A stretch of DNA of 64,000 nucleotides from Lytechinus pictus (lineage: Eukaryota). Under the pieces are notes generated by a model, which had not been told where the DNA came from, did not search any database, and was given only the letters and a program-made list of their open reading frames with translations. The first letter of the stretch is position 1. Every line of letters starts with the position of its first letter. The position numbers were made by a program, and so were the translations under genes. This document shows positions 6,101 through 45,398 of this stretch, piece after piece. The stretch is from contig NC_087246.1 of NCBI RefSeq assembly GCF_037042905.1, positions 68,200,001 through 68,264,000 of the forward strand, given 5' to 3'.

Positions 6101-9100
6101 TATTTTGGAGGTAATCAATTGGGCAGGATGGAATGTCAATTGGGCTTATGTACAATTAACATAAATTGACTATTTAGGTTCATTAAGAATGCACAGAACC
6201 CACAGTGAGAGCTCCCCCTCTATTCATACATATTTCCAAAACATAATTATCATTGGTAAAAAAAAGGAGAGGTGAAAAAACTGCTTGTATATTTGGTAAG
6301 GGGGGGGGGGGTAGGATTCTCAGTTTCAACCCTTTCATGCTCTCAACAAACCAAAGGATCGATGTACATGTATGTAGGTGAGAATATAGTTTGTCAAATG
6401 CACATCTCAAAATTCCACTTTATCCACCCACATGATAACCCCTTTTTCTTTCATCTTATTTTCATTTTATTTGTCTTTGTTGAAAAAAAAATATGTAGGC
6501 ATCTGTCACTACATGTATTTAAAATTGCTGTTTTATTTTGTTTCAAATTGCACCTTAACAATTTCTAGACGCGAGCAGGATTAACACCAGAGCAATTTTT
6601 AGAGCTGGGTAAATTGTGAAGTGTAGCAAGCAGAGCTCTCGCCCCATACACACCAAGCCTCCATTGGCCGACTTTGGGGCCCTTGGTGGGGTCCAGGAGC
6701 CTGTTTAAATGCTTTAAAAGTTAAAATATCATAATCCTGAATATTTAAGTCCTGAATACAGGTGCTTCATTGGCTGAAAATCAAATTGCGCAAGATTTTT
6801 TGAATTGCTTGTGGTTGCAACTCTTTCTGCAACGGGCCCCAGGTGTTGTAAAAATTTGTACAAGGAAAGTCAGGAAAAACAAGGAAAATTTATGGCCCAT
6901 AAAACATGGGCCATGTTTTATGTAGCTTATTGGTGTTTATAAAATAGAGTTACGCACCCTTTTCTGAATTCAATTTTTTTAACCGTAAGCTTGTATCTGG
7001 CAAAGCCCTACCCATTTTTAAGTTAATAAAAAGATCAGTAATCCTGATAGCCTCGGATTTCACAGGCAATGACCTAAATTCACAAAACAAAAATCTGCTC
7101 ACATGATCGAGGTCAACAAAAAGTCACATGTCATGCCAGCCAATACTAATTTTTTTCCACCAGCCCATATTTGTGACTTGTGTACATGTACCTAATTAGT
7201 ATTCCAGTCCATGCACATTATTACATGTGAGATCAGATGTACATGCTAGGGTCACTGTTATCTTGTTAATGAGGACATTTTTGTATTTTTTTTTCTTGTC
7301 AATAATCATTTCTGAAGGGAAAAGTATAAGATTATGGGGGTCAAAATTATTTGTGGGTTAAAAAATGTAATATACCATTTTGACAAAAGGTACCACAAAA
7401 TGTCAATTTTCAAGATAAAATTTTTGAGTATTAACATAACATACACATGACATTACCTTACACATAGTTTGCTATCAGTAGGGTGGAGTGGAATGTAGAG
7501 AGAGCATGATAATTGATTTAAGTTTTTCCCTCCAGGCCATTTTGTTTGCACAGGTACATACATGTACATAATAATTATGATAAAGATCACCTCTGCTTAA
7601 AACAGATTTCTCATCAACTGCAAATGGGTATATATTGAGCTACATTTAGTCTCCTGCTAATACTGGATCCTTTGCTTTTCTGTAACCCACAGAATAAAGA
7701 AGGTACAAGAAAAATCAATAATAATAATAATAATAAAATAAAAAATTGCTGAGCCACAACGCTCCATTGATGCTAAGAAGAACATGGTCCAAATCCAGCG
7801 AGCGCATTAAAAAAAAAAATTGAGACAGGAAGCATGCGATGACGCTCACTTTAATTTTTAGTCTGCAACAAAGGAAGAGACTTCTTTCCTCCTTGAAAAC
7901 ATGGCTCCCACACATCATGGTGAACTTTGTTTGCTGCAAGTCTTGGTAACATTTTTACAGAGTTAAGATTTCTGAAAAATCTGGTGTACCATATTTTCAA
8001 ACCACTTTATTTCACACACAATGCTTGTTACTAATAAAAGAATGAAAATTAAAGAAAGAAGGGAAAATTTGTTCAAACATACTACCAGTCTTACTATTGT
8101 GGTGTGTGTGTTAAAAAAGCTGCATGTGACTGAATTTTTCAGAAAACCATTTATCAAGTTCACATTTTGTGTAAAATAATTGTCAAAATTTTGTTCTCTT
8201 CAGAAATCAAACGGTTTGCTGTCATCAAAATTTCAAAATTTCTTAAAGGAATATACAAAAATATTTAGAAAGTTCAATTTTATTGAAGTTTTCATAACCA
8301 AAAACTCTGATATATGTGTATATCTTTTTTAAGAATGTAATAGGATAATAATCAATTTTCATGTTAATTCTTCGTTTGGACAATAATTGCGCTTTACGAT
8401 TTATCAGGTGCACTGACAATTTTCATTGACATGTAAGTTAGAAATTTGTGAACAAAGATCAGTTGAACAGCTAGCTGCACCTATTCCTCATAAAATTAAA
8501 AAATTATAATTCTAAAGCCCAAAGAACACAGTTAAGGGCCCGATATATGCTGGATGCAGAAAACATATATTTGACACATCATAAAGCCTCCATTGAATGT
8601 TATAGTTTCACAGGAGTGAACTCTTTCAATTATGACAATATCACATGTTAAATACACCCATTGCATCAGGCACAGTGGCCCTTGACAGAGCACTTTTATG
8701 CTTCCATCAAAGTACTTTCAATATTTGATTTTAAAAAAGCCAGTGCACATAGAAAAAAAAACAAATATTCAATTATAAAATAAGGGATATCTTTCCTTTA
8801 ATCTTTCTTGATTAAAAAGCTCATAAAATATGAAAAATCTGAGACTGGTATTTTAGTACTATTTTCAAAAAAATGAATCTATCATATGGTTTAGCCCTAT
8901 GAGAAAGCAAAGCCAAATAATGCTTGATGACTGAAGAGACAGCTAAATTATGGAATCACATTTTCCATTGTCGCATTCATCAAAGCAATGAATCTATTGA
9001 CATTAAGGTTTAATATCTAGCCTTGATAGCACATATTTTTCCCAATATTACTACAGTAGGCACATGACATTTAGCAGAATTATACATGAATTGGCAGGTA

Positions 9101-12100
9101 AAAAGAATGGCTATTTTGGTATCAAAGTTCATGTTATCTCCTACTTTGAGCCATGTTATTTGAATAGATATAAAACTAAGAAAGAATTGTCTCTTTTTCC
9201 CCTTCAAACTGGGCATGTTTTCTCCAAGGCCGTGAAAATCAAATTAATGTGCTGTATTAGGGAGTCCATCTGTCTGACGCTGTTTCGTCTTCACATTCTC
9301 AAGACTATAATAGAATCAATCTCCAAACAAAGCTAATCCTATAGCCAACATGCGTAATGCTTTCACTTGGTAGTTGAACGTCTATGTATGGATTGTTTCA
9401 TGAGAATTGTTACCGATTTTTTTTTACTTCATTACAGTATCTGAGCAAGCCCTCAATGATATAAACATATACAAGAGAAAGACCGCCTTGGTTTACCACA
9501 TATAGAGGCGCCTTACAGAACCTTGTCTTTCATGCAGGAATCCTACAAATATCATTCTAATCCTCACATTGAATAATTTTTTTTTAATGGAATGTGGCAA
9601 AAGCCACTGTGAAAGATTTATAGTGCCTTGATAATAGGATCCTGGCTGAGAGACATAGCCTTAACTTCTGATAAGGTTCCCTATACTTCCCTGTCATAAA
9701 GCTGTACAGTTTTTTTTATCCAAGGCCATAATTTTCATTTTTTGGGGTCAAAAGTTCATTTTAGGATAAAAAATATTGTGGTTGGCATTTAAATCCCCCT
9801 GTTTCTTGGATAACGAATACATGATTTTTTTGTGTGATAACTAAGGAAATTTCTTTAATACATTAATCAAAATTTTCTGTCTTTTTCCCCCAAAAAGTCT
9901 CTGCAGATATCCATGCCTGATCACAAAATTAATGTCACAATTCTGTCTCCAAACCAGCAACATTTAAGGTATGTCAATCTGACCAATTTATTGAATTTCT
10001 TCTCTCAAGATTCTAAATAGTAAATTGAAAAAATATCAGTGACAATCAATTGTGAGTACTGTGTATCTACTAAAAAAATATATGAAGAAAGAGAGATTAA
10101 ACAACTATCGTCATATATTCAGAAAACGCTGATTTATGACAGAAAAATACTCACGGCTGTTTATACATTTTATTTGTGATCAAGTAATGCTATAGGACAG
10201 AGCTACTTAAAGCTAGATATCAAAATATAATAATGTATATTCCCTAAATTACCCATCAATGAATATAATAATTACTCCAATTCATTAAGGGCTTTCAAAA
10301 AAGACTCAAAATCATTTTCTGATATTCCTTTTCTTTTTTTTTCTTTTGAACACTGCCCTAACACTTGCCAAACCAGAAAGTTGGAACTGCAACGATGACT
10401 TGCTCATAAATACTGATTTTTTTTTTGTAAGATTAAATCTGAAAATGAGGAGAGAGGAAAAAAGCAGCATTCAAAGGCAAGGTGCACTGGAAGCCATGTT
10501 TCCAACATGAGGAGTGTACGAGGAGTACACCATACTTACCCGTTACCAAACCTTGCAAACGTTTGCACATCAGGGGCACGAAAAACATGTAGCTGACATG
10601 TACTGCCACCACTTGGTCGGAGCTAGGACAATGGTTGGGGATCCCGAAGAAAGAGCTGCGTGAGCAATTGAAACAACATCACATTGAATAAAACTTGAGG
10701 ACATTCTTGGTAATTCATGCCCTAGCCTATCCTATCCTAGCAAATGTCCTTACTCTACGGCCTTAACTAAACCCCCGACTACCGCGACCTACATCCCTAC
10801 TGGGGGTTGATACTTACTCCCTATGCCTATGCCCCGCAGACGGAGCTGGTTACCTTTCTGTACAGCCTTGTCTTTCGTGCTGGTCCAGCAAGTATCGTGG
10901 AAGCTTACACGTGCAGTATCGGCAGCTGGCTGGAAGCTCACTGACGGCCTTCTCCACAGCCAGGTTACGGCTGCAGAGGTTTTTGCTGATCTCGCAACGG
11001 CAGTTGGGACATGTTGGCTGCTCGTCTTTTAGTCTCGAGTCTGCTAGCAGATGGGTGAAGCAACCAGCACACATCAAATGTCCATTGTTACACTGTATGC
11101 AAAAGAAAATAAATGTAGATTTTTCATCAACTCAATGAAAGGATGACATCATATTAGCTATCACTTCCTTAATATTATAACTGTCTCTTCAAACAGTAAT
11201 TCTACCAGCCCTAATACAATCATTCCATTATAAAACAAGAGTGTCACTAAGGCGAGCACATAATACACCTGCCTGTAACACGAAAAATTGAGTTATTGGT
11301 CAAGCAAGAAAAGTGGAAGGTGGTGACTTCACCTTTGACCTTCTGACCTCAAAATCGATAGAATTGCTGAGATCTATGCCAGTATCATACACACCAAATT
11401 ATATGAGCCTAGGTTAAGTTCAACTAAAGTTATCGCATTAAAAAGGACTTCAGAAGGGTAAGATGAAAACATGTCAGTATGACCTAGACCTTTTGACGTC
11501 AAAATCGATAGGATTCCTGGGATCCATGCTAGTATCATACACACCAAATTATATGAGCCTAGGTTAAGTTAAACTGAAGTTATCGCGTTTACAAGGACTT
11601 CAGAAGGGTAAGATGAAAACATGTCCGTGTGACCTTGACCTTTTGACCTTAAAATCAATAGGCTTCCTGGGATCCATGCTAGTATTATACACACCAAATT
11701 ATATGAGCCTAGGTTAAGCTAAACTGAAGTTATCTTGTTTAAAAGGACTGCGGAAGGGCAAGACGAAAACATGTTACTGTGACCTTGACCTTTTGACCTT
11801 AAAATCAATAGACTTCCTGGGATACATGCTAGTATCATACTCATTAAATTATATGAGCCTAAGTTAAGTTAAACTGAAGTTATCGCATTTACAAGGACTT
11901 CAGAAGGGTAAGATGAAAACATGTCACTGTGACCTTTGACATTTTGGCCTCAAAATCATAAGGCTTCCTGGGATCCATGCTAGTATCATATACACCAAAT
12001 TACATGACCCTACATGTAGGTTAAGTAAAACTGAAGTTATTGCGTTTACAAGGAAAAAGTTAATGGACAGACGGACACCAAGCGTGATACCATAATACGT

Positions 12101-18312: not shown

Positions 18313-18485
18313 NNNNNNNNNNNNNNNNNNNNNNNNNNNNNNNNNNNNNNNNNNNNNNNNNNNNNNNNNNNNNNNNNNNNNNNNNNNNNNNNNNNNNNNN
18401 NNNNNNNNNNNNNNNNNNNNNNNNNNNNNNNNNNNNNNNNNNNNNNNNNNNNNNNNNNNNNNNNNNNNNNNNNNNNNNNNNNNNN
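18313..18485. other. Assembly gap (N run)
   Basis: 173 Ns. Confidence 1.
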
Positions 18486-28807: not shown

Positions 28808-28878
28808 TTACTCATCTCCTGATCCTGTTGATCTCTTTGTGCGCCTCCTTGGAGATCTGCGTGGTGATGGTGTTTTTT
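28808..28878 (-). CDS. SSR1: SSR1 exon 9 coding part (stop TAA)
   Basis: KTPSPRRSPRRRTKRSTGSGDE*; strong polypyrimidine acceptor. Confidence 0.92.
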
Positions 28879-31800
28879 CTGTAAAAAAAAGGAAAAAAAT
28901 AATAAATAAAAATTACCAAAAGATTGGCGATCCCACATGATACTTCATATGTATGTATATATCAAAATACCTTGAATAAAAGGAAGCGTAAACATATGTA
29001 AACAAAGAATCATGCCATGATACTCTGTACATTCACAATGTACGTCTAATTTTTATAAAAATAATTTTTGTTCTGTGAAAATGGCAAAATTTTCTGATAA
29101 TTCTGTTACCATGTTGAACTAAAATATCATGGGAATGTAAGTAGATGTAATGTGATGTTCATCATGAATGTAAGAAGAAAACTGTTGGACTGAAGATACC
29201 AATAGAATTTTCCTCACATCAAATGATGACAGGAAAGGTAAGATTCAAAAGAAAGCTAAGTGTCCTGCATGTAGCTAAAATCAATCAAAATCAAACTAAG
29301 ATGAAAGGTGTGTATGAATAACTGTCTCTGAGACGCATTTAGCTTATGCCCAGTATTTCCCGTATTCAAAAAGTATGTTGGCTGTGTTGACTACCTCCTG
29401 CTGTGTGTAACTCCTATGCACACACTAATATTAGCTACACTGTACATTCAGGGTACATTGTACACACTATACTAGGTTCATCCAGAGTTGATGTATTGTA
29501 TTACAGATTCACTCTATAACGGTAGTCAATGGAACCAACCATCATTCCTTTTCAAACTTTGGTTTACATCTCTAAAGTTTTAAAATAGTTCCTGTACATA
29601 TACTATGAAAATTTCGCACTGGTATTTTTACACTATAAGCCTTACATTCAGCCCATGTCCAAGAACCAAATGATAATTTTTTTAAATGAGTTTAATGAAC
29701 ACTTTATCGCAAGGCGATTCCAAAAAATAATCAACATAACCCCATTTTCCTCCATTATTACTTTATTCCGTTAACTGCTCAAGATAAAATATCATAAGGA
29801 GCATTAACACTTTTCACATGAAAAAGAAAACAAGAGAAATACCCTCTCAGCATGGTCCCACTTATCCAGGGTGAGATATGCATATTTTATGGAATTGCCC
29901 TGCTTTCTTGGACCTCTCAACATGTTAGACATAATTTTACAACACAGGTATCTTACTTGTAACTGCAATATTTTCTTTTGGAATCCAGTCATAATCTACA
30001 TCTGTGTGGTTAGAGGTTCCAGTTTCAACAACTTGTTTTGATGGCTTCTTCTTTTTCTATGGAGAGAAATGTGAAATTTGATGTTTAAAAAAACGTAACC
30101 TAGAAAGGGAATTAATGCAGAAATAAACAATAACAGATTCAAGTTTAAGTATCTTATCACAAATCCTTTATTCTACCAAAACATTCCTCTGTATTATAAA
30201 ATTAAAAGAATGTGATGTCTAGGTATTGTCCAGGGAATACCAAGTGTGATCACAATTGATGCTGAAGAAAAGAAACAAGTGGAATGCCTCTGGCCGTCTC
30301 ACCTGCATCACGCGATTCAATATAGCAGCAGTGCTGATTTTGAAAACTACTATAACTCGCACAAGATGTTCAGTGATACTTGGTTACTCTTATTTCCACG
30401 TTTTATGAACTAGACCAATACACTTATAGAGATATGATGGCAATTCAACAAATACCCCCAACGTGGCCAAAGTTCTTTGACCTTACATGACCTTTGACCT
30501 TGATCATGTGACCTGAAACTCGCACAGGATGTTCAGTGATACTTGATTACTATTATGTCCAAGTTTTATGAACTAGACCAACACACTTTCAAATTTATGG
30601 CTGTAATTCAACAAATACCCCAATTTGGCCAAAGTTCATTGACCCTAAATGACCTTTGACCTTGATCATGTGACCGGAAACTTGCACAGGATGTTCAGTA
30701 ATACTTGATTACTATTATGTCCAAGTTTCATGAATCAGATCCATAAACTTTCAAAGTTATGATGGTAATTCAGCAGATACCCCCAATTCGGCCAAAGTTC
30801 ATTGACCCTAAATGACCTTTGACCTTGGTCATGTGACGTGAAACTCATGCAGGATGTTCAGTGATACTTGATTAACCTTATGTATAAGTTTCATGAACTA
30901 GGTCCATATATTTTCTAAGTTATGATGACATTTCAAAAACTTAACCTTAGGTTAAGATTTTGATGTTGATTCCCCCAACATGGTCTAAGTTCATTGACCC
31001 TAAATGACCTTTGACCTTGGTCATGTGACATGAAACTCAGGCAGGATGTTCAGTAATACTTGATTAACCTTATGGCCAAGTTTCATGAACTAGGTCCATA
31101 TACTTTCTAAGTTATGCTGTCATTTCAAAAACTTAACCTCAGGTTAAGATTTGGTGTTGACGCCGCCATCGCCGCCGTCGGAAAAGCGGCGCCTATAGTC
31201 TCACTCTGCTATGCAGGTGAGACAATGAGAGCAAGTTAACAAAAACTTCAAAATAAGATGAACATGACCTCATATCATTTGACCTTTGACCCCATCATTC
31301 TTATAAGGTCAGATGTAGTATTATGCAAGAATCATATGCACAAAGTATAAACTTCACTGAATTACTGATGCAGAAATAAAGAAATGATACCAAGTTGAAA
31401 AAAATTGACCTTTTGACCCTTAGATGACCTTTGACCCCACCTTCCTCAACAACACACATGTGGTATTACCTAAAGATCATTTTAAATACGTGTGATTATA
31501 ATTGATGCAGAAATAAAGAAATGAGAGGAGGTTAACAAAAACTTCAAGAATGGAAGAACATAACCTTATATAATTTGATCTTTTGACCCCTAAATGACCT
31601 TTGACCCCATCATCCTCATGGGTTCACATGTGGTATAACCCAAGGATCATATGTACCAAGTATGAACTTCATTGTTGTAGAAATAAAGAAATGGGAGGAA
31701 GTTGAACAAAAACTAACATTTTTTACCAGACCAATGGACTAACAGGAAAAGTGATTACTAGGTCTCTGCCGAACTTCATTCAGGCGAGACAAAAAAGGTC

Positions 31801-34800
31801 AAAATATACCACTCACTAGAGGTTCATGTGGCATGTGCGGTGATACATGCCGTAATACATGGCGTGTCACCTGCTGACTAGGGGGAAGCTATTGGTAAAT
31901 CTTACTTCAAACAAAGCAGTGATTTTGGAGATAAAACAGACACTAAACATATTGTTTGTAAACTAAGGTAGGTCTAAAAGAAGCTAAACAAGTTCAGCTG
32001 GGCGAGCTATAAGCTGGGCAAAGATGCCACTAGGGCTCGAATCATGGGATTTTGTTAATGAGGTCGATATGAGCAAATAATTCAGGGTATGGGTCACAAT
32101 TCTCCCCCCCCCCCAAAAAAAAAAAAATAATAATAATAATAATAATTCAGGGTTCAAAGGGTTAATCATTGCTTAGTGGCAGAAATGTAGAACAGGTCCT
32201 GAAATTTTAGTAATATGAACAACGATCTCTTTTTTTTTTAAACTTACCCCAAAGGATGCCATGATTTGTTGTATTACAACAAAAGCTAGAACAATCAATG
32301 CTGCTAGGAACACATACAGGAAAAATCTGTAATGAAAAATAATCAAATAACGATTACAACTCAATTTTTTTTTTTTTTTAACATTAATACTTGATATTCA
32401 TATGAAATACAAAGAACTTTGAGACGCCTCCCTGGTATTAAATCATAGGAGATAATATACAAACAAATAACTAGGAAGTAGAAGTATTGGTCTGTGTGAT
32501 CAGGATATAGAATAGGTAGGTTTTCAAGTTAGGTTTGAAATACAGAATAATCATATATTGACTGGCTTTGAGGAAGATACCACATATTTCCTGAAGTAAT
32601 TGATGTCTTGATGAGAGCAATATGGGTCTACTGAGGAAAGTATAATCTGGAATCTCCCGAAAATTAAAGCCATTCGATAGTATCATTACCTACATGCCTA
32701 CAGTTGTATGGTGTGTATGTCTGTTGGTACTTCTGAATTCATTAACTTTATGAAGTAATCCTAGCCTTGACTAATTGTGACATGAGTGTATACAGCGCAG
32801 GCGCGCACATACACAAGACTTGCGCTTGGGTTTAATGAAATGGGTACACATACATATATTATGGACCGATAATTTACTACAAAGACGCAAAATGACAAAT
32901 TCGAAGAGTAGTGGTGTATGAATATTATGGTCCCCGTCATACAGCTGAATCCTGGCTGGGCCATTGTGACGTATATTGGGTTGAGTTTATCAATCAGACA
33001 GACAAAATATATGTTTTATATCTTGTCTCCAAAATGCCTCATTCAGATGAAAAAAAACAATCAAGGATATGGTATGTATGTGGCATATCTGAACATACTC
33101 CTTGAAAATATGTCATCTTATCTAGAAAAAATAACTTTACCTCCAAAGTTAACAAAAAAATATCAGGTAAAGAAATTTTCTTTATATAATTTTGGTCATC
33201 TGTCAAAATATTTGCAGCATGAAAATGCTTATCGCTAGTTGTCATGCACTGAATCTTCACTAAACAACAAAATCTTCACTTTGTGATATAAAATGAGAAT
33301 GAAAATTATATGATTTCCTATCTTGAATAAAAACCACAAGAATGGAAGTCATGCCAGAATTTTTTTTTTCAAGACTCCACGGTGTCTTCTCAGTTGAGTT
33401 CCAATAATCTCACTGGCAACTTAACAGAGATATCAATCAATTTGAAAAAAGAAAACTAAGAAAAAGTATGAAATGCTGATCCTACTTGCATAGGTTTAAT
33501 TTCAATAAAATAACAATTGAATTTGATTTTTAACATTGGAAGTCTAAAACAAAAATATTGAACGCATAAGGAGAAATTACTTACGTTTCTGTGTCTAGAC
33601 CTTCATCTAATTCAATAAGAGAAACTGTGTCATTGAAAACAGCATCTGAAAAAAGGTTTCCTTCCTGCATTGATAAAAAAGATGACCAGTATATTAAAGG
33701 TCAAGTCCACCTCAGAAAAATGTTGATTTAAATCAGACAAGCATAATGCTGAAAATTTCATTAAAATCGGATGTAAAATAAGAAAGTTATGCATATAACT
33801 ATTTTGTGAAATTAAACGAAACTTAAAAATTTCATAACTCATAGTTCACTTCACACCAATCAACTTTATAGTTCAAATTATAATCCATTTTGTAACTTGC
33901 TTTGTAGCAAAAATACAATTTTTTTTAAAGCCCTCTCACATGAAATAAAAACTATCATGTACAAAGGTGTTCTCAGACTCTGGTTATCTGAAATCATACT
34001 TTCCCTATCTTGCCACAAAGAAGGGGCTTGTCACAGACTGGACAATGATGGATGCCTACAATAACTAATCTCCACAGAAGTACTCTATGTTTATCAGTAA
34101 GAGCAAGCAGAACCATCATGTCCATTAATGTCTAATGACTAAAGCTCAGGGATGGACTCTAAACCTAGTACAATGAATGAAGACAGCATGAAAAACTCAA
34201 TGCTAGTCAACATTAATAGTAAAGGACAGAGACAAACACTCCTTCATTGAAGTCAAGAGAGGGATAGTTCAGACCAAATGCCTTCCAGCTTAACATCATC
34301 GAACAGGCAACTCGATCACTTTCACATCATATTATAATTGGCTTTTATTATATTTCACACTTTGGGTATGTCGAGTATGGGAAAGGGTGCTGTATGATGT
34401 TACGCAACACCTTTTCTGTATCAAACAAGGAAACGGATGATTGAGAATCAACAATGTTTAATTGAAACTTACTGAATCTTTGTATGCGAGCTCAACAACG
34501 AATCCAAACTGACGTGCAGCAAAGACCTCTCCTGCTTGGAATGAATATTCAAATGTTGCTTCTTTGTTGGGTTCTACTACTGTGTTGTATTCTTTCTCTG
34601 TGAACTAGTAAGCAAAATAAAAAGAAAGATATGAAGCATCGTTTCCTGAATATCATTCATTCATTTCCACCTGACATTATATGGCCAGATGGATTTCTAG
34701 AGAAGAAACCTCTTTAAAAAAATGTAAGAATAAAGATCAAAACAAATGTAAATGAGGGAAAAAGCAATAGAATATTAACTTACAAATACAGACTCTGTTT

Positions 34801-37800
34801 AAACCACAGTAATCTGTTGGAATTGGGAGAAATTTGACTTTAAAACAAAGAATAACATGTGTCTTTCATAATCTAGCCTCAAAATTTACTTTGACTCATA
34901 GAAGGTCGACTTATGCAGTGTTAATCATAGAAAAAATACTTAAATATCAATGTGTATAGGAAAATAAATGAAATATTTTGCATGGTCTAAAGTGTTACAT
35001 TATACAAATAAAAATAATGTGTTTTGAATAAGGATAAAAATCTGTATACATTTTCTGCATTAGCAGTTGTACAGAAAAATGTTTTTGACTGCTTCTTCTT
35101 CTTTATTGTATAGGCAATACAATAAAGCTTAAAGGAAAATGAAACTCTTGGAGCAAGTTAGCTTTTGTGAAAGCAGAAAAATCAAAGAATAAGATCAACA
35201 AAAGTTTGAGTAAAATAGGACTAGCAATAGAAGAGTTATGAGCATTTGAATGTCTAGATCACTAATACTATGGAAATCCTCCAATTGGCAACGCAACCAA
35301 GATCTATGATATCACAGATGAACAACTCTCCCCTTTTGGACACTGAAAATATACCCCAAAACATCTCTTTTTGCTCATTCTAATCATATGACAAACGATT
35401 CATCAATGATATAATGTTGTGAAACATCTGTACTTGTCCTCTCATAAAGAAAACACCTCACCTTGTGATAGATTCTATAAAAGTGAGAATATAAGTGAAA
35501 TAAGTACTAAAGCAATGAGGGAGTTGTACGTGTGTGACATCACAGATCTTGGTCGCATTGCCAATGGGAGGATCTACATGGCATTAGTGATCTCAATATT
35601 CAAATGCTCATAACTTTCTTATTATTCATTCAATCTTCCTCAAACTTTCAACAATATGTTTCTTTGATTTTTCTCTTTGATATGGATTCAGCTGGTTTTA
35701 AGGGTTTCATTCTCCTTTAATTCTGCAATTTACTTTGATGAAACTTACATTGTACATGTAAAATGAGAAGTCCTGTGGATACCGTAGAGATGCATGTAGA
35801 CTGTCAATTGTGAAATCAAGTTGGCCATTGTTTGTAAATCCAACCAAGACTTGTAATGGGATAGTCACTGGGATTTCTACAGAGATACAGAAAGATATTT
35901 TATGATTGCAAGTAATAGATGGTAAATCATGTAACAAACGATTTGCATCCCTATGTATGTAATCAACAAAATTTGAAGGTCTCCGTCCTCTGGTTTTATG
36001 AGGGAGACACAACAAAAGTACATCAGAAATAACTTCCTTCTCACTACGGAAACAGAGACCAGCAAATCTCATAGTACATTTAATTACAGTGAAGAAATTT
36101 CATATAACGAAACAATGTAATGCACATGAATTTTGACATACTAGTACCGTGTTTACACTTAATCGGCATTTGAATCGGCTCGCGGTTCTGAACCGCGAGC
36201 CGATTCAGCATCGGCTTTTTCATAGCGTGTAAACGCAAGCAACTTGAATCGGCTCGCGGTTCAGAACCGGCAATTTGCACCACCAAAGTAGTAGGTTCTG
36301 AACCGCGAGCCGATGCAGAATCGGCTTTTTTACTACGTGTAAACAGAAAGCCAATTCTGCACTGGCAATTTGTGCGCATTTCAATTACTTTACCATTGTG
36401 ACGTAATTGTAAGCGCACTGATCCAGCGTTGTCTTTATTATGACGTATATTGTAGGTATGCGTATCATTTCAGGTTTTTGCATCGGCTCGCGGTTCTGAA
36501 CCGCGAGCTGTAACAACGTGTAAACGCAATCCAAATGCCGATTCTGCATCGGCATTTGGTTCAGAACCAATTGCCGATTAAGTGTAAACACGGTATTAGA
36601 CACCCACATTTTGTGGTATTACCGGCATGCAAATGAGTGTTAACACCGAGCACAGTGATATAGAAATACGTATCACGATCCAAAGTATATATCTTAAAAG
36701 ATTTGGGGAGCATTATTGTAGTCACATATTTTTTTTGTAAAACCTGGTAAAAATATATTTTGGCTATTACTAGAGTTTTGAAAAAGCAGTAGATTCTACT
36801 GTAAGGAGAGTAAAAAAAGTGGAAAGTGGTGAGAATGCTTGAAAAGCAGTAGACTACCACCAAAGGTGGTAGAGTTGGCAGCTATGGGTTTTTCCATTTC
36901 CCCCATGTTAAAGGGATGGTCCAGGCGGGAAATATTTATATCTCAATAAAGAGAGTAAAATTCACAGCGCAAAATGCTGAAAATTTGATCAAAATCGGAT
37001 AACAAATAACAAAGTTATTGCATTTTAAAGATTTGCATTATTCTGGTGAAACAGTTCTAGGCACGTCGTTATGGATATTCATTAGGTGGGCTGATGATGT
37101 CATATCCCCACTTGTTCTTTTGTATATTTTTATATGAAATTAGGTTTATTCAAATATTTTCTACCAAGAACTAAAACAATTGGACTGACAATTGATTGAG
37201 TACATTAGTTATTTATTGCTGCAACTTATTTCATTATGATGGAGACACATCATTTACACATGTATGAAAAAATTAAACATTTATGATTTCATGTAATAAC
37301 ATAAGAAAAAGGAAAGTGGAGATGTGACATCATCAGCCCACCTAATGAATATTCATGACGATGTGCATATAACTGTTTTTAAAAAATATTGATAAACTTT
37401 AAAATTCAATAACTTCATTATTTTTTATTCAATTTGATGAAACTTTCAGCATTTTGCTCTGTGAATTTTACTCTATTTATTTAGATATAAATATTTTCAG
37501 CCCGGACCATCCCTTCAATACTCTAGATGAAGAGTCAAAGAGAAGGATCAAAATCTTACCTTTCTCTGAATTTGTAGTGAAAAGAAAGGTTGTGTCAGCA
37601 TCTGGTGATGCCTTCAGTGGGGGCTCTTCCTCTTCATCCTCCTCCTCTTCCCCTTCTCCTGCTTCTACTGCTGTCCCTTCTTCTTCTACATCTTCTTCTG
37701 TCTCAACCTAATATAGTAAAGATAGTAGCCTTATTATATAAGGGAGTACTGTCAGTCAATATTTTTTTCAAGACATAAAATAATGTTTACCTTGACAGCC

Positions 37801-40800
37801 AATCACAGCTCGCTGTTTAACGTCCTTGTCTCTTTCGGTTCTATTACATGTATAAAGTGTTTTGCTCTAGCGTTCGGGTCATTCATACAATTTTACTCCG
37901 ATGAGTGCATGTCGAAAAGCTTCAGTATGTCCGTTTTTAAGCACTTAGAGACATTCTTTGTGATAAGCGCTATATAAATGTTAATTATTATTATTATTTA
38001 ACGCTACAGTTGTATTTTACAAGATATTTAATACATGTAAACTGGGTTCCAAAAGAAACTGATCAAACTTTACAATCTATGCACATGTGGTACTACAGAC
38101 TACTACCCAAGGATCATATGTACCAAGTATGAACTTAATTGATGCAGAAATAAAGAAATGAGGGCAAGTTGAACAAAAACAAAATAATGATGGACATGTC
38201 CTCATACATGTATCATTTGACCTTTTGACCCGTACAGCGTACACGTACATGTATGTAGATGACCTTTGACCCCATCGATGGTACGACACACATGTGGTAT
38301 TACCTACTGATAACATGTACCAAATATGGACTTAATTGATGCAGAAATAAAGAAATGAGAGCAAGTTGGAACAAAAACTAACATTTTGGAACAGACTGGA
38401 CAATGACTAACATACATATCAGCATGAGGGCTTTGAGGAGTAGGCCTATATCTTTTTTTGCACATGTTTTGCACTATTTTGGCTTCTCTAAAATGATGCG
38501 AAGGTGTTTGGTATATCTTCCGATCGCAAATTCAACAACCCGCAAAAGTGTCGGACCCCATGATTCTTAAAAATTATGTACACGAAATTAACAGCTCTTA
38601 CTATAGAATACTAGCTCTGAGAGACATGGCAATTTCACTATTTCACTTGGAGATGGGAGTAAAATCACATGGGATACTTATTATGAACAAAGGTGTTCTC
38701 AGCCTCTGGTTATCTGAAATCATACTTTCCCTATCTTGCCACAAAGAAGGGGCTTGTCACAGACTGGACAATGATGGATGCCTACAATAACTAATCTCCA
38801 CAGAAGTACTCTATGTTTATCAGTAAGAGCAAGCAGAACCATCATGTCCATTAATGTCTAATGACTAAAGCTCAGGGATGAACTCTAAACCTAGTACAAT
38901 GAATGAAGACAGCATGAAAAACTCAATGCTAGTCAACATTAATAGTAAAGGACAGAGACAAACACTCCTTCATTGAAGTCAAGAGAGGGATAGTTCAGAC
39001 CAAATGCCTTCCAGCTTAACATCATTGAACAAGCAACACAATTTCTTTTAAATGATATTTATAAGGTCTCCATATGTTTAAAATAAAAAAGTGATTAAAC
39101 TTATCAAAACTTTTGCACAATGTTGGATCATTTCAAGAAATGATTGCACTATGATCTCTGTTGGATGATTTCAGACTTAGTTCGGAGTGCCTATTAATAG
39201 TGCCCCCTGTAAGTTTAACAGTACATTGTTTTTTTTTAACACCTACTAAACTTCATGAACCTGGTCAAACCTACTTGGGGCTCGTAACACATAGGTTAGC
39301 GATTAATCGCTAAATGAATGGCTTATCAAGATCATCCTTGCATGCGCGTTTTGCCCTGTAGACTGACTAGGAACCAATCACAATTGTTCTTTCAAATTTG
39401 CGATTAACCGCTAATCTTTGTGTTACGGAGCCCAGGAGGAAGTAACATAATTAATATCCATATTGAATTTTCTTTTATTTATTCATTATAATAATAATAA
39501 TACCGCTGGGAAAACAGTTTTCAGAACTGAAGTGGCTTCCCTGGGTAAATATATACCTAAGATCTTATTATTATTTTCATTATGATCAACTTGATTATAA
39601 CCAATTGTATAATCCTTTGTATACACTGCACATTACCCAGATCATATTATACCTGTCCATCTTCTTCATCTTCCTCCTCCTCTTCCTCTATCTCCTCCCC
39701 ATCCAAGATATCTTCAAGGTTGTCACGAGTTTCTCTCTGATCTTTGGCAGCCAGGGCACCTAGTAATAAAATAAAAGTAACAGTTGTCTATGTTTTGGTT
39801 CAAGATACATCAAGTTTATATTTCTTCTCGGAGAACGGGAGTCTATAACAAAAGGTATATGAAATATACTTTAACTCATTACCACCTCAAAACACTTTAA
39901 ATCATGTCCAGACAAAAAAAGACCCCTATAAATTTTGAGATGAACAACAACTTTCCATTCCGATATTTTCGCCGATATCAATTTTCGGTATTGGTGTGCC
40001 CTGCTGATTAAAACAGCATTTCATTGAACTTCGCAGATTGGTAATGAAACTTGACTTTGAATCATAGCGCATGTGAAAATCAAAACATCACATGCAAATT
40101 TGGCCACCACCGAATCGGCAGGTTTCTGACACGCATAAGAAAAATCCTGGCGAGAACGCTGGTCGACTCATCACTGAGAAAACTTCATAAAGTTTGATAC
40201 AAAATTATGCAAATTGCACCTAGAATATGCATTTATTTGCATATTCAAGGTAAATGTAAATCAAACAGTTTTAAAATGTAGAGAATCCCATAAACTTCAA
40301 AACGAATGGTCATGACATAGGTCTACACATGTTATCAGTAGTAGAGTAAAGTCCCCAAACATCGGACAATTCCAAATATCGGACGAAAATGACGACTCTC
40401 TCCTCATAACTACAGGGACCCGCACTGGCAGGGGACTTGCATGCATAAGATACATGAACATACCTGCCATGCGATTACTGCACACACAATTTTTTTAATT
40501 CTTTTTTATTTCGCCAAGACGCATATCGCGATATGCGTGGTGTCATCTTGGCGAAATACAAAGAGATCAAGATGGTGACGTAAACACGGTGGCAAGTTAT
40601 TCCCGTCTTTTCATATTTTTCTTGTTATTTTAATGAATTCTTGTTTAAAAATGAAATTGATAGTGTTGAAATGTCGGAAATGGAGTTGTATCCCATTTAC
40701 ATGATGATTTAGGGCTAGATCTTTCAGAAGTGAAGTAGAAATCTTGGGGGCAAAAACTCCTGTTTCTTGGGCGGTACACGTACATGAATGGGAAGGAATC

Positions 40801-43800: not shown

Positions 43801-45214
43801 CCCCCCCTAGGTACGCTAGTGCTCGGGACTTACATTACGTAACTTTTATCTTCCACATGCGACATGTACTATGCCCCCTCTTATATACCCCATATGCCCC
43901 TGCACAGACTCGTCTACATTGATTTCGATATTTAAGCGTCATTATAAAATTATAGCAAAAAGAACGCCTTGATTAAAGGCCATTACCCCTAGAGACTCGC
44001 GAGCGTCATGTGACAACTCGCCCTGGATTTGCACGTACAGGATCCTATGGCGACAAAATCCATCGCAAGAGTTGGCCAGAAGAGGCGATGAAAACACAAA
44101 ATTTGGAAAGAAAAGAACCCGTGAGTACCCGTTTTACATTATAATTATGAAATTAGTATATAATTGATAACATAGACCTAAATTTAGGCCGTAATTTTGA
44201 TTAATTTGCTGGAAATTCAAGGCCAAAACGTACCCGTCTGGCGTCGACTTTTCCAACACGCGTTGGAATAGCGGTGTAGCCCCAGAGTGCCATTAGGGGA
44301 CTTGCAATGCAAAATCCCCCCGTCGGGGCTCTTCAATTTTTGTCTTTAATGAATAAACTTTTTGAAAATTAACACGACCAAAATGCAAATTAATATTCCC
44401 TCTTGGCATTAATTGCCAAAAAACAGAGAAAAATCAAGTTAAAAGGAACAAAAACAGTGACTTACCTCGGCTGTCGCGCAAATTCACTTCCCGTTTTATC
44501 CGCTCTTAAGTACATAAACATATGGCCATTGAGTCCCCTGTACAGATCGCGCTAGAACTTCGGTCTCTGTATTTGGTGAGTGAAGCCAACGGAGTTCAGC
44601 TGAACAACCAACATAACAGAGACTGAAGCTTTTGGTCTAAGTCTGGCTATGCATCGCGTCGCGTGCAGAAGAGTGTATGGGTGCGCAGACAAGGGGCACC
44701 ATTTTTTGTTCAATCTGAAAATAACTGCCCAAGGTTTTTTCCGAGAAAATCATATATCTCGTTCAAATTTTCATGAGATATTTTAGATCTAGATTTAACT
44801 CATAGTCATAATCATCATGATCAATGATGACTATTAATTAATTGAGGAACATATCAACTGTAATTTTAAACAGTGTAGGCCCTAAAACTTTGTGAAATAA
44901 AAAGAAATTTGTGTCAATCTTAACTCAAATTGTAGGTGAGCAGACTTGGGGACCGCCATCAAAAATTTGAATTAGATCTAGTCTAGGCCTAGATTAGATT
45001 TGGGGAGATTCTGTTCTAATCTAACTTAACTAAGTCTAAGTTACTAACGTTAGCACTAGCAGACATGCAGTTGCAATATGTTGATCATTCGTGAATCCTG
45101 AATCCATAACTTTAGTTTCGATCATTATTCCTTACCATTATTGCTTGTGAACAGCAGTGTGGATGGGAGAACCAGCAAAAGTAAAAGTAGAAATCTTGAA
45201 AGCATCCTCATCAT
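28808..45214 (-). CDS. SSR1: Translocon-associated protein alpha (TRAP-alpha), complete, 307 aa: join(45214-45136, 39759-39653, 37707-37560, 35876-35749, 34604-34473, 33664-33585, 32326-32248, 30056-29957, 28878-28808)
   Basis: Signal peptide MMRMLSRFLLLLLLVLPSTLLF, acidic N-terminus, ASPDADTT, VLVGFTN...SLRYPQDFSFY, EATFEYSF, DAVFNDT, TM FFLYVFLAALIVLAFVVI, VETGTS..DVDYDWIP, basic tail ...RRTKRSTGSGDE*. All 8 introns are GT-AG with compatible phases; exon lengths sum to 924 nt. Confidence 0.96.
29957..30056 (-). CDS. SSR1: SSR1 exon 8
   Basis: KKKKPSKQVVETGTSNHTDVDYDWIPKENIAVT; donor |GTAAGA. Confidence 0.95.
30273..31225. mobile_element. Helentron/DINE-like element with ~163-bp internal tandem repeats
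   Basis: ATGTTCAGT recurs at 30366, 30529, 30691, 30854, 31046; subterminal IR GTCTCACCTGCA/TGCAGGTGAGAC. Related GACCTTTGACC-rich fragments at 31226-31792 and ~38080-38400. Confidence 0.72.
32248..32326 (-). CDS. SSR1: SSR1 exon 7 (transmembrane helix)
   Basis: FFLYVFLAALIVLAFVVIQQIMASFG; CAG| and |GTAAGT. Confidence 0.95.
32495..32694 (-). ncRNA. Candidate ~200-nt box C/D-like RNA (SSR1 intron 6)
   Basis: GTAATGA (6/7 box C), ~110-nt imperfect hairpin, C' ATGATTA, short hairpin TTTCAA/TTGAAA, guide CCTACCTATTCTATATC, D box CTGA (32503-32500). Confidence 0.5.
33585..33664 (-). CDS. SSR1: SSR1 exon 6
   Basis: EGNLFSDAVFNDTVSLIELDEGLDTET; CAG| and |GTAAGT. Confidence 0.95.
33968..34305 (-). 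ncRNA. Long (338 nt) intronic box C/D sno/scaRNA, copy A (SSR1 intron 5)
   Basis: Terminal stem TGTTC/GAACA; box C ATGATGT (34299-34293); D' CTGA; 15-bp stem closing a long insert; C' ATGATTT; D CTGA (33976-33973). Sense to host; duplicated at 38694-39031. Confidence 0.8.
34473..34604 (-). CDS. SSR1: SSR1 exon 5
   Basis: FTEKEYNTVVEPNKEATFEYSFQAGEVFAARQFGFVVELAYKDS; donor |GTAAGT. Confidence 0.95.
35129..35720. mobile_element. TTAA-flanked non-autonomous DNA transposon
   Basis: TTAAAGGAAAATGAAAC...GTTTCATTCTCCTTTAA with long subterminal inverted repeats. Confidence 0.8.
35749..35876 (-). CDS. SSR1: SSR1 exon 4
   Basis: IPVTIPLQVLVGFTNNGQLDFTIDSLHASLRYPQDFSFYMYN; donor |GTAAGT. Confidence 0.95.
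36144..36596. mobile_element. MITE (PIF/Harbinger-like)
   Basis: TIRs TACCGTGTTTACACTTAATCGGCA / TGCCGATTAAGTGTAAACACGGTA; internal palindromic GCTCGCGGTTCTGAACCGCGAGC repeats. Confidence 0.8.
36908..37518. mobile_element. TTAA-flanked non-autonomous DNA transposon
   Basis: TTAAAGGGATGGTCC...GGACCATCCCTTCAA, long TIRs; degenerate relative at ~60419-60990. Confidence 0.8.
37560..37707 (-). CDS. SSR1: SSR1 exon 3
   Basis: VETEED...PPLKASPDADTTFLF; donor G|GTAAGA. Confidence 0.93.
38694..39031 (-). ncRNA. Long (338 nt) intronic box C/D sno/scaRNA, copy B (SSR1 intron 2)
   Basis: Same as copy A except 3 substitutions and no indels; identity decays just outside the terminal stem. Confidence 0.8.
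39278..39433. mobile_element. Short MITE
   Basis: GGGCTCGTAACACATAGGTTAGCGATTAATCGC / GCGATTAACCGCTAATCTTTGTGTTACGGAGCCC. Confidence 0.7.
39653..39759 (-). CDS. SSR1: SSR1 exon 2 (acidic)
   Basis: ALAAKDQRETRDNLEDILDGEEIEEEEEEDEEDGQ; TAG| and |GTATAA. Confidence 0.9.
43235..43428 (-). mobile_element. tRNA-derived SINE (5' part)
   Basis: GGCGCGATGGCTCAGTCGGTAGAGC...CCGGGTTCGATTCCC followed by GTGCCCTTAAGG body; no acceptor-stem closure. Confidence 0.75.
45136..45214 (-). CDS. SSR1: SSR1 exon 1 (signal peptide)
   Basis: 79 nt, hydrophobic leader, donor G|GTAAGG. Confidence 0.92.
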
Positions 45215-45398
45215 GACGCCTTTTCTAGCTTGACCTCGAAATAAGGAGGATGAAGAGAGATTTGGGGAGATAACTTCACCGTCGCCAAATTTTCCAAGCG
45301 ATGGTGGGTTCAAAAGGTAGATTTACACATGTTTCGCTGCTACTTCTTTCGATTTTAGCTCATATTTAATGCATTGTTGGCACACAGGTCGAATGTGT

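What the first reader, a model, noticed from the sequence alone, without database searches (positions are those of the whole stretch)
29316..39031. SSR1 as host of a set of long structured intronic RNAs
Seen: after subtracting transposons, introns 2, 3, 5, 6, 7 and 8 each retain one 150-340-nt self-complementary island. Each begins on the sense strand with an ATGA(T/G) box-C-like word (ATGATGT, ATGAGAT, ATGATGT, GTAATGA/ATGATAC, ATGATTC, ATGATGG). Established: one RNA per intron is the classic snoRNA host-gene layout, usually in ribosome and translation genes. Inference: a translocon gene may co-express a family of unusually large guide RNAs, linking ER-translocation capacity to ribosome modification. 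Only the intron 2/5 RNA is well supported.
Basis: inference. Interest (0 to 1): 0.7.

Follow-up and report, generated by a model that had tools for sequence, protein, structure and literature searches.

The report
One old guide RNA, not six
Only one of the six proposed intron RNAs in this sea urchin's SSR1 gene is real: an abundant, unusually long (about 330 bases) box C/D guide RNA present in two introns, and it belongs to an undescribed family that sits in SSR1 introns from sponges to sea urchins.

Summary
The host is TRAP-alpha/SSR1 on the minus strand (nine coding exons). The "set of six long structured intronic RNAs" does not hold up.

The islands in introns 3, 6, 7 and 8 fold no better than shuffled sequence (z 0.0 to -1.6). 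They are dispersed repeats, with 50 to 348 or more look-alike candidates in the genome. Their ATGA(T/G) words occur at chance density. The intron-3 island has zero RNA reads; introns 6-8 could not be tested with reads.

The duplicated element is real (38694-39031 and 33968-34305, minus strand). It has only two copies in 812 Mb and folds at z -5.9. In rRNA-depleted RNA-seq it is about 70-100 times deeper than the SSR1 exons, on the sense strand, with sharp ends. It has box C, box D, an in-register 5-bp terminal stem, and D' and C' boxes. An 11-nt guide pairs with 28S rRNA at the A equivalent to yeast Am2280. A structured insert of about 270 nt lies between D' and C'.

The same module lies in SSR1 introns of two sea stars, an octocoral, the annelid Owenia and the sponge Sycon. 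Stem and internal hairpin both covary. Rfam has no matching family; SNORD15 is the nearest relative. The scan's reader had flagged this RNA separately (s1-324875).

The parts
38694..39031 (-). Long box C/D snoRNA gene, copy in SSR1 intron 2 (338 nt from terminal stem to terminal stem)
   Evidence: One of only two copies in the genome. RNA-seq depth is 560-1275 against exon depth of about 4-18. Read ends are sharp at 38698 and 39020/39021, in the same strand sense as the spliced exons. It is one of the only two loci in the window with box C, box D and an in-register stem.
33968..34305 (-). Second copy of the same gene, in SSR1 intron 5. It differs from the intron-2 copy at 3 of 338 positions.
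   Evidence: Depth is 126-287. Flanks are about 63-70% identical for 40 nt and unalignable beyond that.
39027..39031 (-). 5' half of the terminal stem (UGUUC). It pairs with 38694-38698 (GAACA).
   Evidence: The register is correct for a kink-turn: one unpaired nucleotide (39026) lies before box C. The stem covaries with GUCC/GGAC and GGCC/GGCU in other species.
39019..39025 (-). Box C (AUGAUGU)
   Evidence: UGAUGU is invariant in 12 family members from 6 species; the first base is A in 11 and G in Acanthaster.
38999..39009 (-). D' guide core (AGGCAUUUGGU), complementary to 28S GCCAAAUGCCU. The fifth nucleotide upstream of D' pairs with 28S A2629 (own numbering), which corresponds to yeast A2280.
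   Evidence: Yeast numbering was checked against PMC4174444. AGGCAUUUGG is invariant in all 12 members.
38995..38998 (-). Box D' (CUGA)
   Evidence: The sponge copies have UUGA.
38727..38994 (-). Structured insert of 268 nt between D' and C': a closing rod plus three arms
   Evidence: The insert alone folds at -100 kcal/mol, z -8.1. The three variant positions seen in all reads (38860, 38861, 38868) lie here.
38909..38931 (-). Conserved apical hairpin with a GUUUU loop (loop at 38918-38922)
   Evidence: Present in all 12 family members with covarying stems. 85% of cells are paired against 53.5% in shuffles, and the covariation score is 0.93 against 0.29 (0 of 500 shuffles). A similar GUUYU hairpin occurs in SNORD15.
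38717..38723 (-). Degenerate box C' (AUGAUUU)
   Evidence: A UGAU core lies at the equivalent place in the other species.
38703..38716 (-). D guide (CAGAUAACCAGAGG); no convincing target found
   Evidence: No clean complementarity to the urchin's own 18S, 5.8S, 28S, U1, U2, U4, U5 or U6. It is not conserved between classes.
38699..38702 (-). Box D (CUGA)
   Evidence: The RNA 3' end falls one nucleotide downstream, at 38698.
37560..37709 (-). SSR1 exon 3 (acidic region)
   Evidence: Spliced reads and a spliced contig; translation.
35749..35876 (-). SSR1 exon 4
   Evidence: Pfam TRAP_alpha, profile positions 24-58; splice joints.
34472..34604 (-). SSR1 exon 5
   Evidence: Pfam TRAP_alpha, profile positions 59-99; splice joints.
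35895..36072 (-).
   Evidence: z -1.4. At least 128 genomic candidates at 81-91% identity. RNA-seq depth is 0 over 35931-36117.
32400..32690 (-).
   Evidence: z 0.0. At least 50 candidates cover 32555-32690. There is no terminal stem, and the 17-19-nt GU-rich match to 28S lies within the chance tail. Nothing in Rfam. Expression was not tested.
31760..32047 (-).
   Evidence: z -1.6. At least 187 candidates. Expression was not tested.
29316..29546 (-).
   Evidence: z -1.1. At least 348 candidates. Expression was not tested.

Best explanation
SSR1 (TRAP-alpha) in this sea urchin hosts one intron-encoded box C/D small nucleolar RNA gene, present as two near-identical copies in introns 2 and 5. It does not host a set of six different RNAs.

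How it most likely works:
- The RNA is released from the spliced SSR1 introns and trimmed back to a box C/D kink-turn, formed by box C (AUGAUGU), box D (CUGA) and a 5-bp terminal stem. Release from the intron and trimming are inferred.
- It accumulates as an RNA of about 325-338 nt. This is shown.
- Its guide, immediately upstream of box D', pairs with the universally conserved 28S sequence GCCAAAUGCCU in helices 70/71. That places the A equivalent to yeast Am2280 at the fifth paired position, where fibrillarin would 2'-O-methylate it. The pairing is shown; the methylation is inferred.
It extends as a rod from the internal kink-turn and carries an anciently conserved hairpin with a GUUUU loop whose role is unknown.

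The family is old. The same box C, guide and D' module, the same terminal stem and the same hairpin lie in SSR1 introns of sea stars, an octocoral, an annelid and a sponge. Length from box C to box D grows from about 155-169 nt in the annelid and sponge to 327 nt in the urchin.

The other four islands are fragments of interspersed repeats.
For: Host gene:
- Exon translations match Pfam TRAP_alpha in consecutive profile segments.
- Spliced reads define introns 3-5.

The element in the urchin:
- Only 2 copies in 812 Mb, while a control MITE returned 5791 candidates.
- Fold z -5.9; the insert alone gives z -8.1.
- In three rRNA-depleted RNA-seq runs, depth is 560-1275 against 4-18 on exons and about 0 in the flanking intron. 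All reads have the exon strand sense. Molecule ends cluster at 38698 and 39020/39021.
- An independent contig that includes unique intron flanks carries two of the three variant letters seen in the reads, which ties the RNA to this locus.
- The two copies are the only loci in the 64-kb window with box C, box D and an in-register stem of 4 bp or more. Chance expectation is 0.1-0.4 per window.
- The copies are 335/338 identical from stem to stem. Flanks are about 63-70% identical for 40 nt and then at chance level.

The guide:
- 10 Watson-Crick pairs plus 1 GU to the urchin's own 28S, covering position 5. Six of 1000 shuffles reach this.
- The target corresponds to yeast A2280, a known methylated site.

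Other species:
- The module lies in SSR1 introns of an unnamed asterozoan (2 copies), Acanthaster planci (1), an octocoral (1), Owenia fusiformis (2) and Sycon ciliatum (4).
- Taxa of the unnamed contigs were inferred from neighbouring proteins.
- The guide and boxes are invariant, and the terminal stem shows compensatory changes.
- The apical hairpin covaries.

The other islands.
Against: - At 338 nt the RNA is two to four times the usual size of a methylation guide.
- The guide duplex is only 10-11 bp. Among 458 control CUGA sites in the window, 16 (two of them the element's own copies) reach 10 Watson-Crick pairs, so the complementarity alone is weak evidence.
- Read ends at 39020/39021 would place the 5' end inside box C. 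This may be an artefact of end clipping or library loss, but I could not resolve it.
- Box C ends in U rather than A, and box C' is degenerate.
- In the unconstrained fold, the guide is partly paired with the D-guide region.
- The genome also has canonical SNORD15-like genes aimed at the neighbouring A (the yeast A2281 equivalent), so the site region is already served.
- Neither methylation nor snoRNP proteins were tested.
- Reads were laid only on 33500-39100, so expression of the islands in introns 6-8 is untested.
- No second echinoid genome was available.
Confidence: 0.8

Rival explanations
1. One reading: introns 3, 6, 7 and 8 also encode distinct large structured guide RNAs, so SSR1 hosts a family of about five different RNAs.
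For: Each island carries an ATGA(T/G) word. The intron-6 stretch has a 17-19-nt GU-rich complementarity to 28S ending at a CUGA. Introns 6-8 were not covered by the single read-laying run.
Against: Fold z-scores are at chance. All four islands are dispersed repeats with 50 to 348 or more candidates. None has box C, box D and a terminal stem. The intron-3 island has no reads. The intron-6 complementarity lies within the tail of 458 control sites. Rfam finds nothing. None of these sequences recurs in the SSR1 loci of other species, whereas the real RNA does.
Confidence: 0.04
2. The duplicated element is a low-copy foldback transposon or a plain intragenic duplication. Its RNA is only a stable hairpin by-product of intron turnover, with no snoRNP and no guide function.
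For: It forms a long imperfect hairpin. It is duplicated within one gene. The window is full of MITEs that also fold strongly.
Against: Only two copies exist in the genome. The ends of the high-identity core and of the RNA coincide with a box C/D terminal stem. The same boxes, guide, stem and hairpin are kept in SSR1 introns of five other species in four phyla, while the rest of the sequence diverges.
Confidence: 0.03
3. It is a box C/D RNP that does not methylate. Instead it acts as a folding or processing chaperone for the 28S helix 69-71 region, as U8 or U14 act elsewhere. The conserved GUUUU hairpin and the insert would then be the functional parts.
For: The duplex is short (10-11 bp). The internal hairpin is anciently conserved and has no role in ordinary guiding. 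Canonical SNORD15-like genes already cover the adjacent nucleotide. The D guide is not conserved.
Against: The guide keeps exactly the same register relative to D' in all 12 copies, which is what a methylation guide requires. The target is a site methylated in yeast. No extra complementarity of the hairpin loop to rRNA near the target was found.
Confidence: 0.12
4. It is a composite Cajal-body RNA (scaRNA) that modifies spliceosomal snRNAs, like the roughly 330-nt composite C/D-H/ACA or tandem C/D-C/D scaRNAs described in vertebrates (recalled from memory, not checked here).
For: The size is similar. It has internal extra CUGA and AUGAUGG words. One arm gives a weak Rfam hit to a C/D family (SNORD103, E 2.8).
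Against: No guide shows convincing complementarity to the urchin's own U1, U2, U4, U5 or U6. The internal AUGAUGG is buried in a perfect stem and has no matching box D. No ACA lies in the position required after a hairpin. The shorter orthologues lack these extra words.
Confidence: 0.03

Closest known systems
Intron-encoded box C/D methylation-guide snoRNAs in general
   Same: Sense-strand intronic location. Box C near the 5' end, box D near the 3' end, and a terminal stem in kink-turn register. Internal D' and C' boxes. A guide ending next to D' with the target at the fifth position. Accumulation as a discrete RNA far more abundant than the host mRNA. Paralogous copies in different introns of one host gene.
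   Different: The length is 338 nt rather than about 70-150 nt, because of a structured insert of about 270 nt between D' and C'. The host is a translocon gene rather than a ribosomal-protein or translation gene. No Rfam 15 family matches, even at E up to 10.
SNORD15 (U15) / yeast snR13, Rfam RF00067
   Same: It targets the same 28S helix 70/71 sequence, CCAAAUGCC. snR13 guides Am2280 and Am2281 in yeast (PMC4174444), and SNORD15A guides A3764 in human (PMC5389715). It is long for a C/D snoRNA (146-nt model). It has a central hairpin with a GUUYU loop, seen in the Rfam consensus and in the urchin's own SNORD15-like genes. It occurs as multiple copies in neighbouring positions of the genome.
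   Different: The covariance model gives no hit on the SSR1-hosted RNA. Here the guide lies upstream of D', not D, and is shifted by one nucleotide (A2280- rather than A2281-equivalent). There is no second guide for the G2288-equivalent. The urchin has separate canonical SNORD15-like genes elsewhere.
Miniature inverted-repeat transposons (the neighbouring hairpins in introns 3 and 4)
   Same: Strong hairpin-like self-complementarity in an intron.
   Different: MITEs here have thousands of copies, reads on both strands that run into unrelated flanks, and no C/D boxes. The element has two copies, sense-only reads with sharp ends, and cross-phylum conservation.

Membership tests
Box C/D snoRNA | Box C (RUGAUGA) near the 5' end and box D (CUGA) near the 3' end | tested here: met
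   AUGAUGU at 39019-39025 and CUGA at 38699-38702. Both are conserved in 12 members; the last box C position is U, not A.
Box C/D snoRNA | Terminal 5'-3' stem in kink-turn register | tested here: met
   Five Watson-Crick pairs with one unpaired nucleotide before box C. The two copies are the only such loci in the window; 0.1 are expected for a stem of 5 bp or more. Compensatory changes are seen between phyla.
Box C/D snoRNA | Antisense element of 10 nt or more, ending 1-2 nt from box D or D', with the target at the fifth position | tested here: met
   An 11-nt duplex (10 Watson-Crick) with the urchin's own 28S. Six of 1000 shuffles reach it. The register is identical in all 12 members.
Box C/D snoRNA | Internal D' and C' boxes | tested here: inconclusive
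   D' is a clean CUGA (UUGA in the sponge). C' is degenerate (AUGAUUU), though a UGAU core sits at the equivalent place in all species.
Box C/D snoRNA | Accumulates as a discrete stable RNA processed from a sense intron | tested here: met
   depth 560-1275 against about 0 in the flanking intron, sharp ends, and the same strand sense as the exons.
Box C/D snoRNA | Typical size of about 60-150 nt | tested here: not met
   338 nt in the urchin; about 168-240 nt in the other species.
Box C/D snoRNA | Bound by fibrillarin, NOP56, NOP58 and SNU13, and the target nucleotide is 2'-O-methylated | not testable with these tools
   Needs immunoprecipitation and RiboMeth-seq.
SNORD15 (RF00067) | Scores at or above the Rfam gathering threshold (75 bits) | tested here: not met
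   No SNORD15 hit at E up to 10 on the urchin, Acanthaster or Owenia copies. The urchin's canonical SNORD15-like genes score 59-60 bits.
SNORD15 (RF00067) | D guide for the A2281-equivalent and D' guide for the G2288-equivalent | tested here: not met
   The guide is upstream of D' and aims at the A2280-equivalent. There is no G2288 guide.
SNORD15 (RF00067) | Central hairpin with a GUUYU loop | tested here: met
   Whether this hairpin is a defining feature of SNORD15 is my reading of the Rfam consensus line, not a documented criterion.
Interspersed repeat / MITE (for the intron 3, 6, 7 and 8 islands) | Many dispersed, diverged copies in the same genome | tested here: met
   At least 128, 50, 187 and 348 first-look candidates, with 40 scored hits each at 68-91% identity on many chromosomes.
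Interspersed repeat / MITE (for the duplicated element) | Many dispersed copies | tested here: not met
   Two candidates and two hits, both in this gene.

The most novel reading that the evidence does not exclude
The SSR1-hosted RNA may be more than a routine methylation guide. It has stayed in the translocon gene SSR1 from sponges to sea urchins. Its internal GUUUU hairpin is equally old and is shared with SNORD15. Together these could mark a dedicated module that acts on the 28S helix 69-71 intersubunit-bridge region. Its dosage would be tied to the expression of an ER-translocon subunit, giving a physical link between secretory load and ribosome make-up. The large urchin-specific insert could add a further, lineage-specific function.
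Probability: 0.08. Interest if true: 0.75.

Novelty: new variant of a known kind. Interest (0 to 1): 0.45.

Why it matters
For the finding as written, the result is mostly deflationary. Five of the six islands reduce to one gene family, and four are ordinary repeats.

What remains is still useful:
- It is a box C/D snoRNA family absent from Rfam 15 and from the searchable literature.
- Its host-gene association appears to span animal evolution (sponge, cnidarian, annelid, echinoderm). It is missing from the single SSR1 loci examined in a limpet, a brachiopod and a lizard.
- Its architecture tolerates an insert that grows from roughly 110 nt to roughly 270 nt between D' and C'.
- It gives a testable prediction of a methylated A next to the SNORD15 site in the helix 70/71 region, which helps form intersubunit bridge B3 (PMC4174444).
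- It offers a natural series for asking how much extra RNA a C/D snoRNP can carry.
- It corrects annotation: two unannotated RNA genes lie in SSR1, and canonical SNORD15-like genes fall just under the Rfam threshold.

Tried and rejected
- Rfam at gathering threshold on the whole window, and at E up to 10 on 29000-39400, on the intron-6 stretch, and on the urchin, Acanthaster and Owenia copies. Only sub-threshold noise came back: MITE hairpins resembling miRNAs, SNORD103 at E 2.8 on one arm, and SNORD10 at E 0.9 on Owenia.
- Targets for the other three CUGA-adjacent stretches in the long RNA. A 14-nt, 4-GU match to 18S G250 is broken in the intron-5 copy, and nothing convincing was found in U1, U2, U4, U5 or U6.
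- H/ACA or composite scaRNA reading. No ACA lies in a valid position, and the internal AUGAUGG is buried in a stem.
- Complementarity of the conserved hairpin loop to rRNA near the target: none.
- Pattern scan of JGI metagenome contigs for the box C, guide and D' module: two identical bacterial coding-sequence hits, which are chance matches.
- SOCS-SSR1 synteny as a route to further loci. It worked for Acanthaster but not for Asterias or the urchin.
- SSR1 loci of Lottia, Lingula, Varanus and two unnamed contigs (L022, L025): no copy of the module.
- Direct Rfam LSU/SSU searches of the genome failed several times. I obtained rDNA through 5.8S instead.
- Literature searches for SSR1/TRAP-alpha as a snoRNA host found nothing.
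- Which of the two copies is expressed could not be resolved. Reads fit both, and the diagnostic sites vary between individuals.

Full report
**Host gene.** The finding's stretch lies in a gene on the minus strand.
- Translations of the candidate exons read as translocon-associated protein alpha.
- Two consecutive exons match Pfam TRAP_alpha at profile positions 24-58 and 59-99.
- Spliced RNA-seq reads and a spliced contig fix exon 3 (37560-37709), exon 4 (35749-35876), exon 5 (34472-34604) and the upstream edge of exon 6 (33663).
- Six-frame reading places the signal-peptide exon near 45140-45220, exon 2 near 39650-39740 and the last exon near 28811-28880.

**The six islands.**
- The word itself carries no information. 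ATGA(T/G) occurs 495 times in the window, about once per 260 nt per strand.
- On the sense strand, only the duplicated intron 2/5 element folds better than dinucleotide shuffles (z -5.9).
- The others give z -1.4, 0.0, -1.6 and -1.1.
- A 200-nt sliding scan shows structure only at known MITEs, at a repeat end near 31000-31300, at 33000-33200 and at the duplicated element.

A control MITE (36908-37518) returns 5791 first-look candidates in the 812-Mb assembly.

| Island | Candidates in the genome | Identity |
|---|---|---|
| Intron 3 | at least 128 | 81-91% |
| Intron 6 (5' half, 32555-32690) | at least 50 | 68-88% |
| Intron 7 | at least 187 | 70-78% |
| Intron 8 | at least 348 | 74-88% |
| Duplicated element | exactly 2, both in this gene | 99-100% |

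The four "non-transposon" islands are therefore interspersed repeats, and the "duplicated element" is the only unique sequence.

**Expression.** I laid three rRNA-depleted total-RNA runs of the same species on 33500-39100.
- The intron-2 copy has mean depth 1275, 873 and 562 in the bin 38736-38922.
- Exon bins lie at about 4-18, and the neighbouring intron at 0.15-0.5.
- All reads have the same mate orientation as the spliced exon joints, so the RNA is sense to SSR1.
- Molecule ends pile up at 38698 and at 39020/39021.
- The intron-5 copy shows depth 126-287. Its reads are clipped at 33978, next to a difference between the copies.
- The intron-3 island bin (35931-36117) has depth 0.
- The MITEs show two-stranded coverage with loose ends, meaning reads from other copies.
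- Every read differs from the reference at 38860, 38861 and 38868. A contig from another data set spans unique intron flanks (33762-34501) and carries two of these letters. The RNA therefore comes from this locus, and the differences are polymorphisms.

**Anatomy**. Reading the minus strand from 5' to 3':
1. Terminal stem half UGUUC, then one unpaired base.
2. Box C, AUGAUGU.
3. A 20-nt spacer ending in AGGCAUUUGGU.
4. Box D', CUGA.
5. An insert of 268 nt that folds on its own at -100 kcal/mol (z -8.1).
6. A degenerate box C', AUGAUUU.
7. A 14-nt spacer.
8. Box D, CUGA.
9. Terminal stem half GAACA.

The stem is in the exact register a box C/D kink-turn needs. In the whole 64-kb window, on both strands, the two copies are the only places with box C, box D and an in-register stem of 4 bp or more within 50-400 nt. 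Chance expectation is 0.1-0.4 per window.

The copies differ at 3 of 338 positions from stem to stem. The next 40 nt on each side are about 63-70% identical, and beyond that the similarity is at chance level. This pattern fits an old DNA duplication with the RNA itself held constant by selection or gene conversion.

**Target.** I took the urchin's own rDNA through a 5.8S hit.
- The D' guide forms 10 Watson-Crick pairs plus one GU with 28S GCCAAAUGCCU.
- The fifth guide position lies opposite A2629 in the urchin's numbering.
- Six of 1000 shuffled guides do as well. Among 458 CUGA sites in the window, 16 reach 10 pairs, two of them being the element's own copies. The pairing alone is therefore weak evidence.
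- The site matters, however. Using the yeast landmarks in PMC4174444 (m5C2278, Am2280, Am2281, Gm2288), the target is the A2280 equivalent in helices 70/71.
- The urchin also has canonical SNORD15-like genes: one on C7 and three at 1-kb spacing on C10, scoring 59-60 bits, under Rfam's cut-off of 75. Their D guide puts the neighbouring A (the A2281 equivalent) at position 5, and their D' guide puts the G2288 equivalent there. This matches what PMC5389715 discusses for human SNORD15A.
- The long RNA's other CUGA-adjacent stretches have no convincing target in rRNA or in U1, U2, U4, U5 or U6.

**Conservation.** An HMMER search with exon 4 and look-ups of the encoding contigs gave SSR1 loci of other animals.

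| Species or contig | Locus and coordinates | Copies and SSR1 intron | Box C to box D (nt) |
|---|---|---|---|
| Unnamed asterozoan (neighbouring SOCS protein 58% identical to Asterias rubens) | L014:8713-8941 and 11493-11725 | 2, in introns 4 and 6 | 218 |
| Acanthaster planci | L027:4218-4457, minus strand | 1, in intron 4 | 227 |
| Octocoral (neighbouring protein 78% to Dendronephthya, 75% to Xenia) | L023:8609-8831 | 1, in intron 1 | 210 |
| Owenia fusiformis (annelid) | L031:2848-3015 and 4982-5151 | 2, in introns 1 and 3 | 155 |
| Sycon ciliatum (sponge) | L028:3105-3284, 5866-6040, 7160-7336 and 7575-7751 | 4, in four introns | 164-169 |

Across the 12 sequences:
- UGAUGU of box C, AGGCAUUUGG and its distance to D' are invariant.
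- The terminal stem changes by compensatory pairs: GUUC/GAAC in the urchin, GUCC/GGAC in sea stars, coral and annelid, and GGCC/GGCU in the sponge.
- The D guide is not conserved between classes.
- No copy was found in the SSR1 loci of Lottia, Lingula, Varanus or two unnamed contigs.

**A conserved internal hairpin.** All 12 members carry a hairpin with a GUUUU-type loop near the middle. On a 23-column alignment:
- All six stem pairs show changes on both sides.
- 85% of cells are paired, against 53.5% in shuffles.
- The covariation score is 0.93, against 0.29 in shuffles (0 of 500) and 0.14-0.33 for slid partners.

One caveat applies. I chose each window as the best-stemmed G-N-N-Y-U loop in the central region, so part of the pairing is there by selection. 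The recurrence of the loop itself is not.

The Rfam SNORD15 consensus and the urchin's SNORD15-like genes have a similar GUUYU hairpin. With the shared target region, this makes SNORD15 the closest known relative. The covariance model does not detect the SSR1-hosted RNAs, however, and the guide sits at D' rather than D.

**The intron-6 candidate.** Another note of this scan (s1-325017) proposed a second long C/D-like RNA at 32495-32694.
- It has a 17-19-nt pyrimidine-rich stretch ending at a CUGA that pairs with 28S 2798-2816. Five of those pairs are GU, and the run lies within the extrapolated tail of the 458 control sites.
- There is no terminal stem, box C is degenerate, and the 5' half is a dispersed repeat.
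- I regard it as unsupported, though its expression was not tested.

**Verdict.**
- The single real RNA is a new, oversized variant of an ordinary kind of gene. Its notable feature is a host-gene association that appears as old as animals.
- The link between translocon expression and ribosome modification remains an idea without evidence beyond that association.

Noticed in passing
G000:C7:32207185-32207336; G000:C10:21875121-21875276, 21876042-21876197, 21877179-21877334 (loci L006-L008): Four canonical SNORD15-like box C/D genes match the full Rfam model at 59-60 bits, under the 75-bit cut-off, so an Rfam-based annotation would miss them. Three lie at about 1-kb spacing, probably in consecutive introns of one host gene. 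Their guides aim at the yeast G2288 and A2281 equivalents.
   Followed up: partly
L028:3105-3284, 5866-6040, 7160-7336, 7575-7751 (Sycon ciliatum); L031:2848-3015, 4982-5151 (Owenia fusiformis): The sponge SSR1 gene carries four copies of the same snoRNA in four different introns, and the annelid gene carries two. Copy number and intron position differ in every lineage, while the host gene stays the same.
   Followed up: partly
window 30354-31131, 31280-31711 and 38105-38380: Tandem repeats of about 163-192 nt and about 170 nt, sharing a TGACCTTTGACC motif, fill much of intron 7 and recur in intron 2. RNA reads on 38100-38360 show joints with foreign inserts, meaning they come from other copies.
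   Followed up: no
Its copy number and expression were not checked.
   Followed up: partly
window 35125-35720, 36141-36599, 36908-37518: Three MITE-like inverted-repeat elements lie in introns 3 and 4. The first is heavily covered by RNA reads on both strands, with loose ends at 35128/35129 and 35720/35721. This marks its boundaries and shows transcription of copies elsewhere.
   Followed up: partly
window 38860, 38861, 38868 (and 34134, 34135, 34142): All RNA reads of three runs carry T, G and C where the assembly has A, A and A in both copies. One run is about half-and-half at the third site. These are probably alleles shared by both copies (concerted evolution) rather than editing.
   Followed up: partly
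window 18313-18485: A run of 173 N (assembly gap or masked stretch).
   Followed up: no
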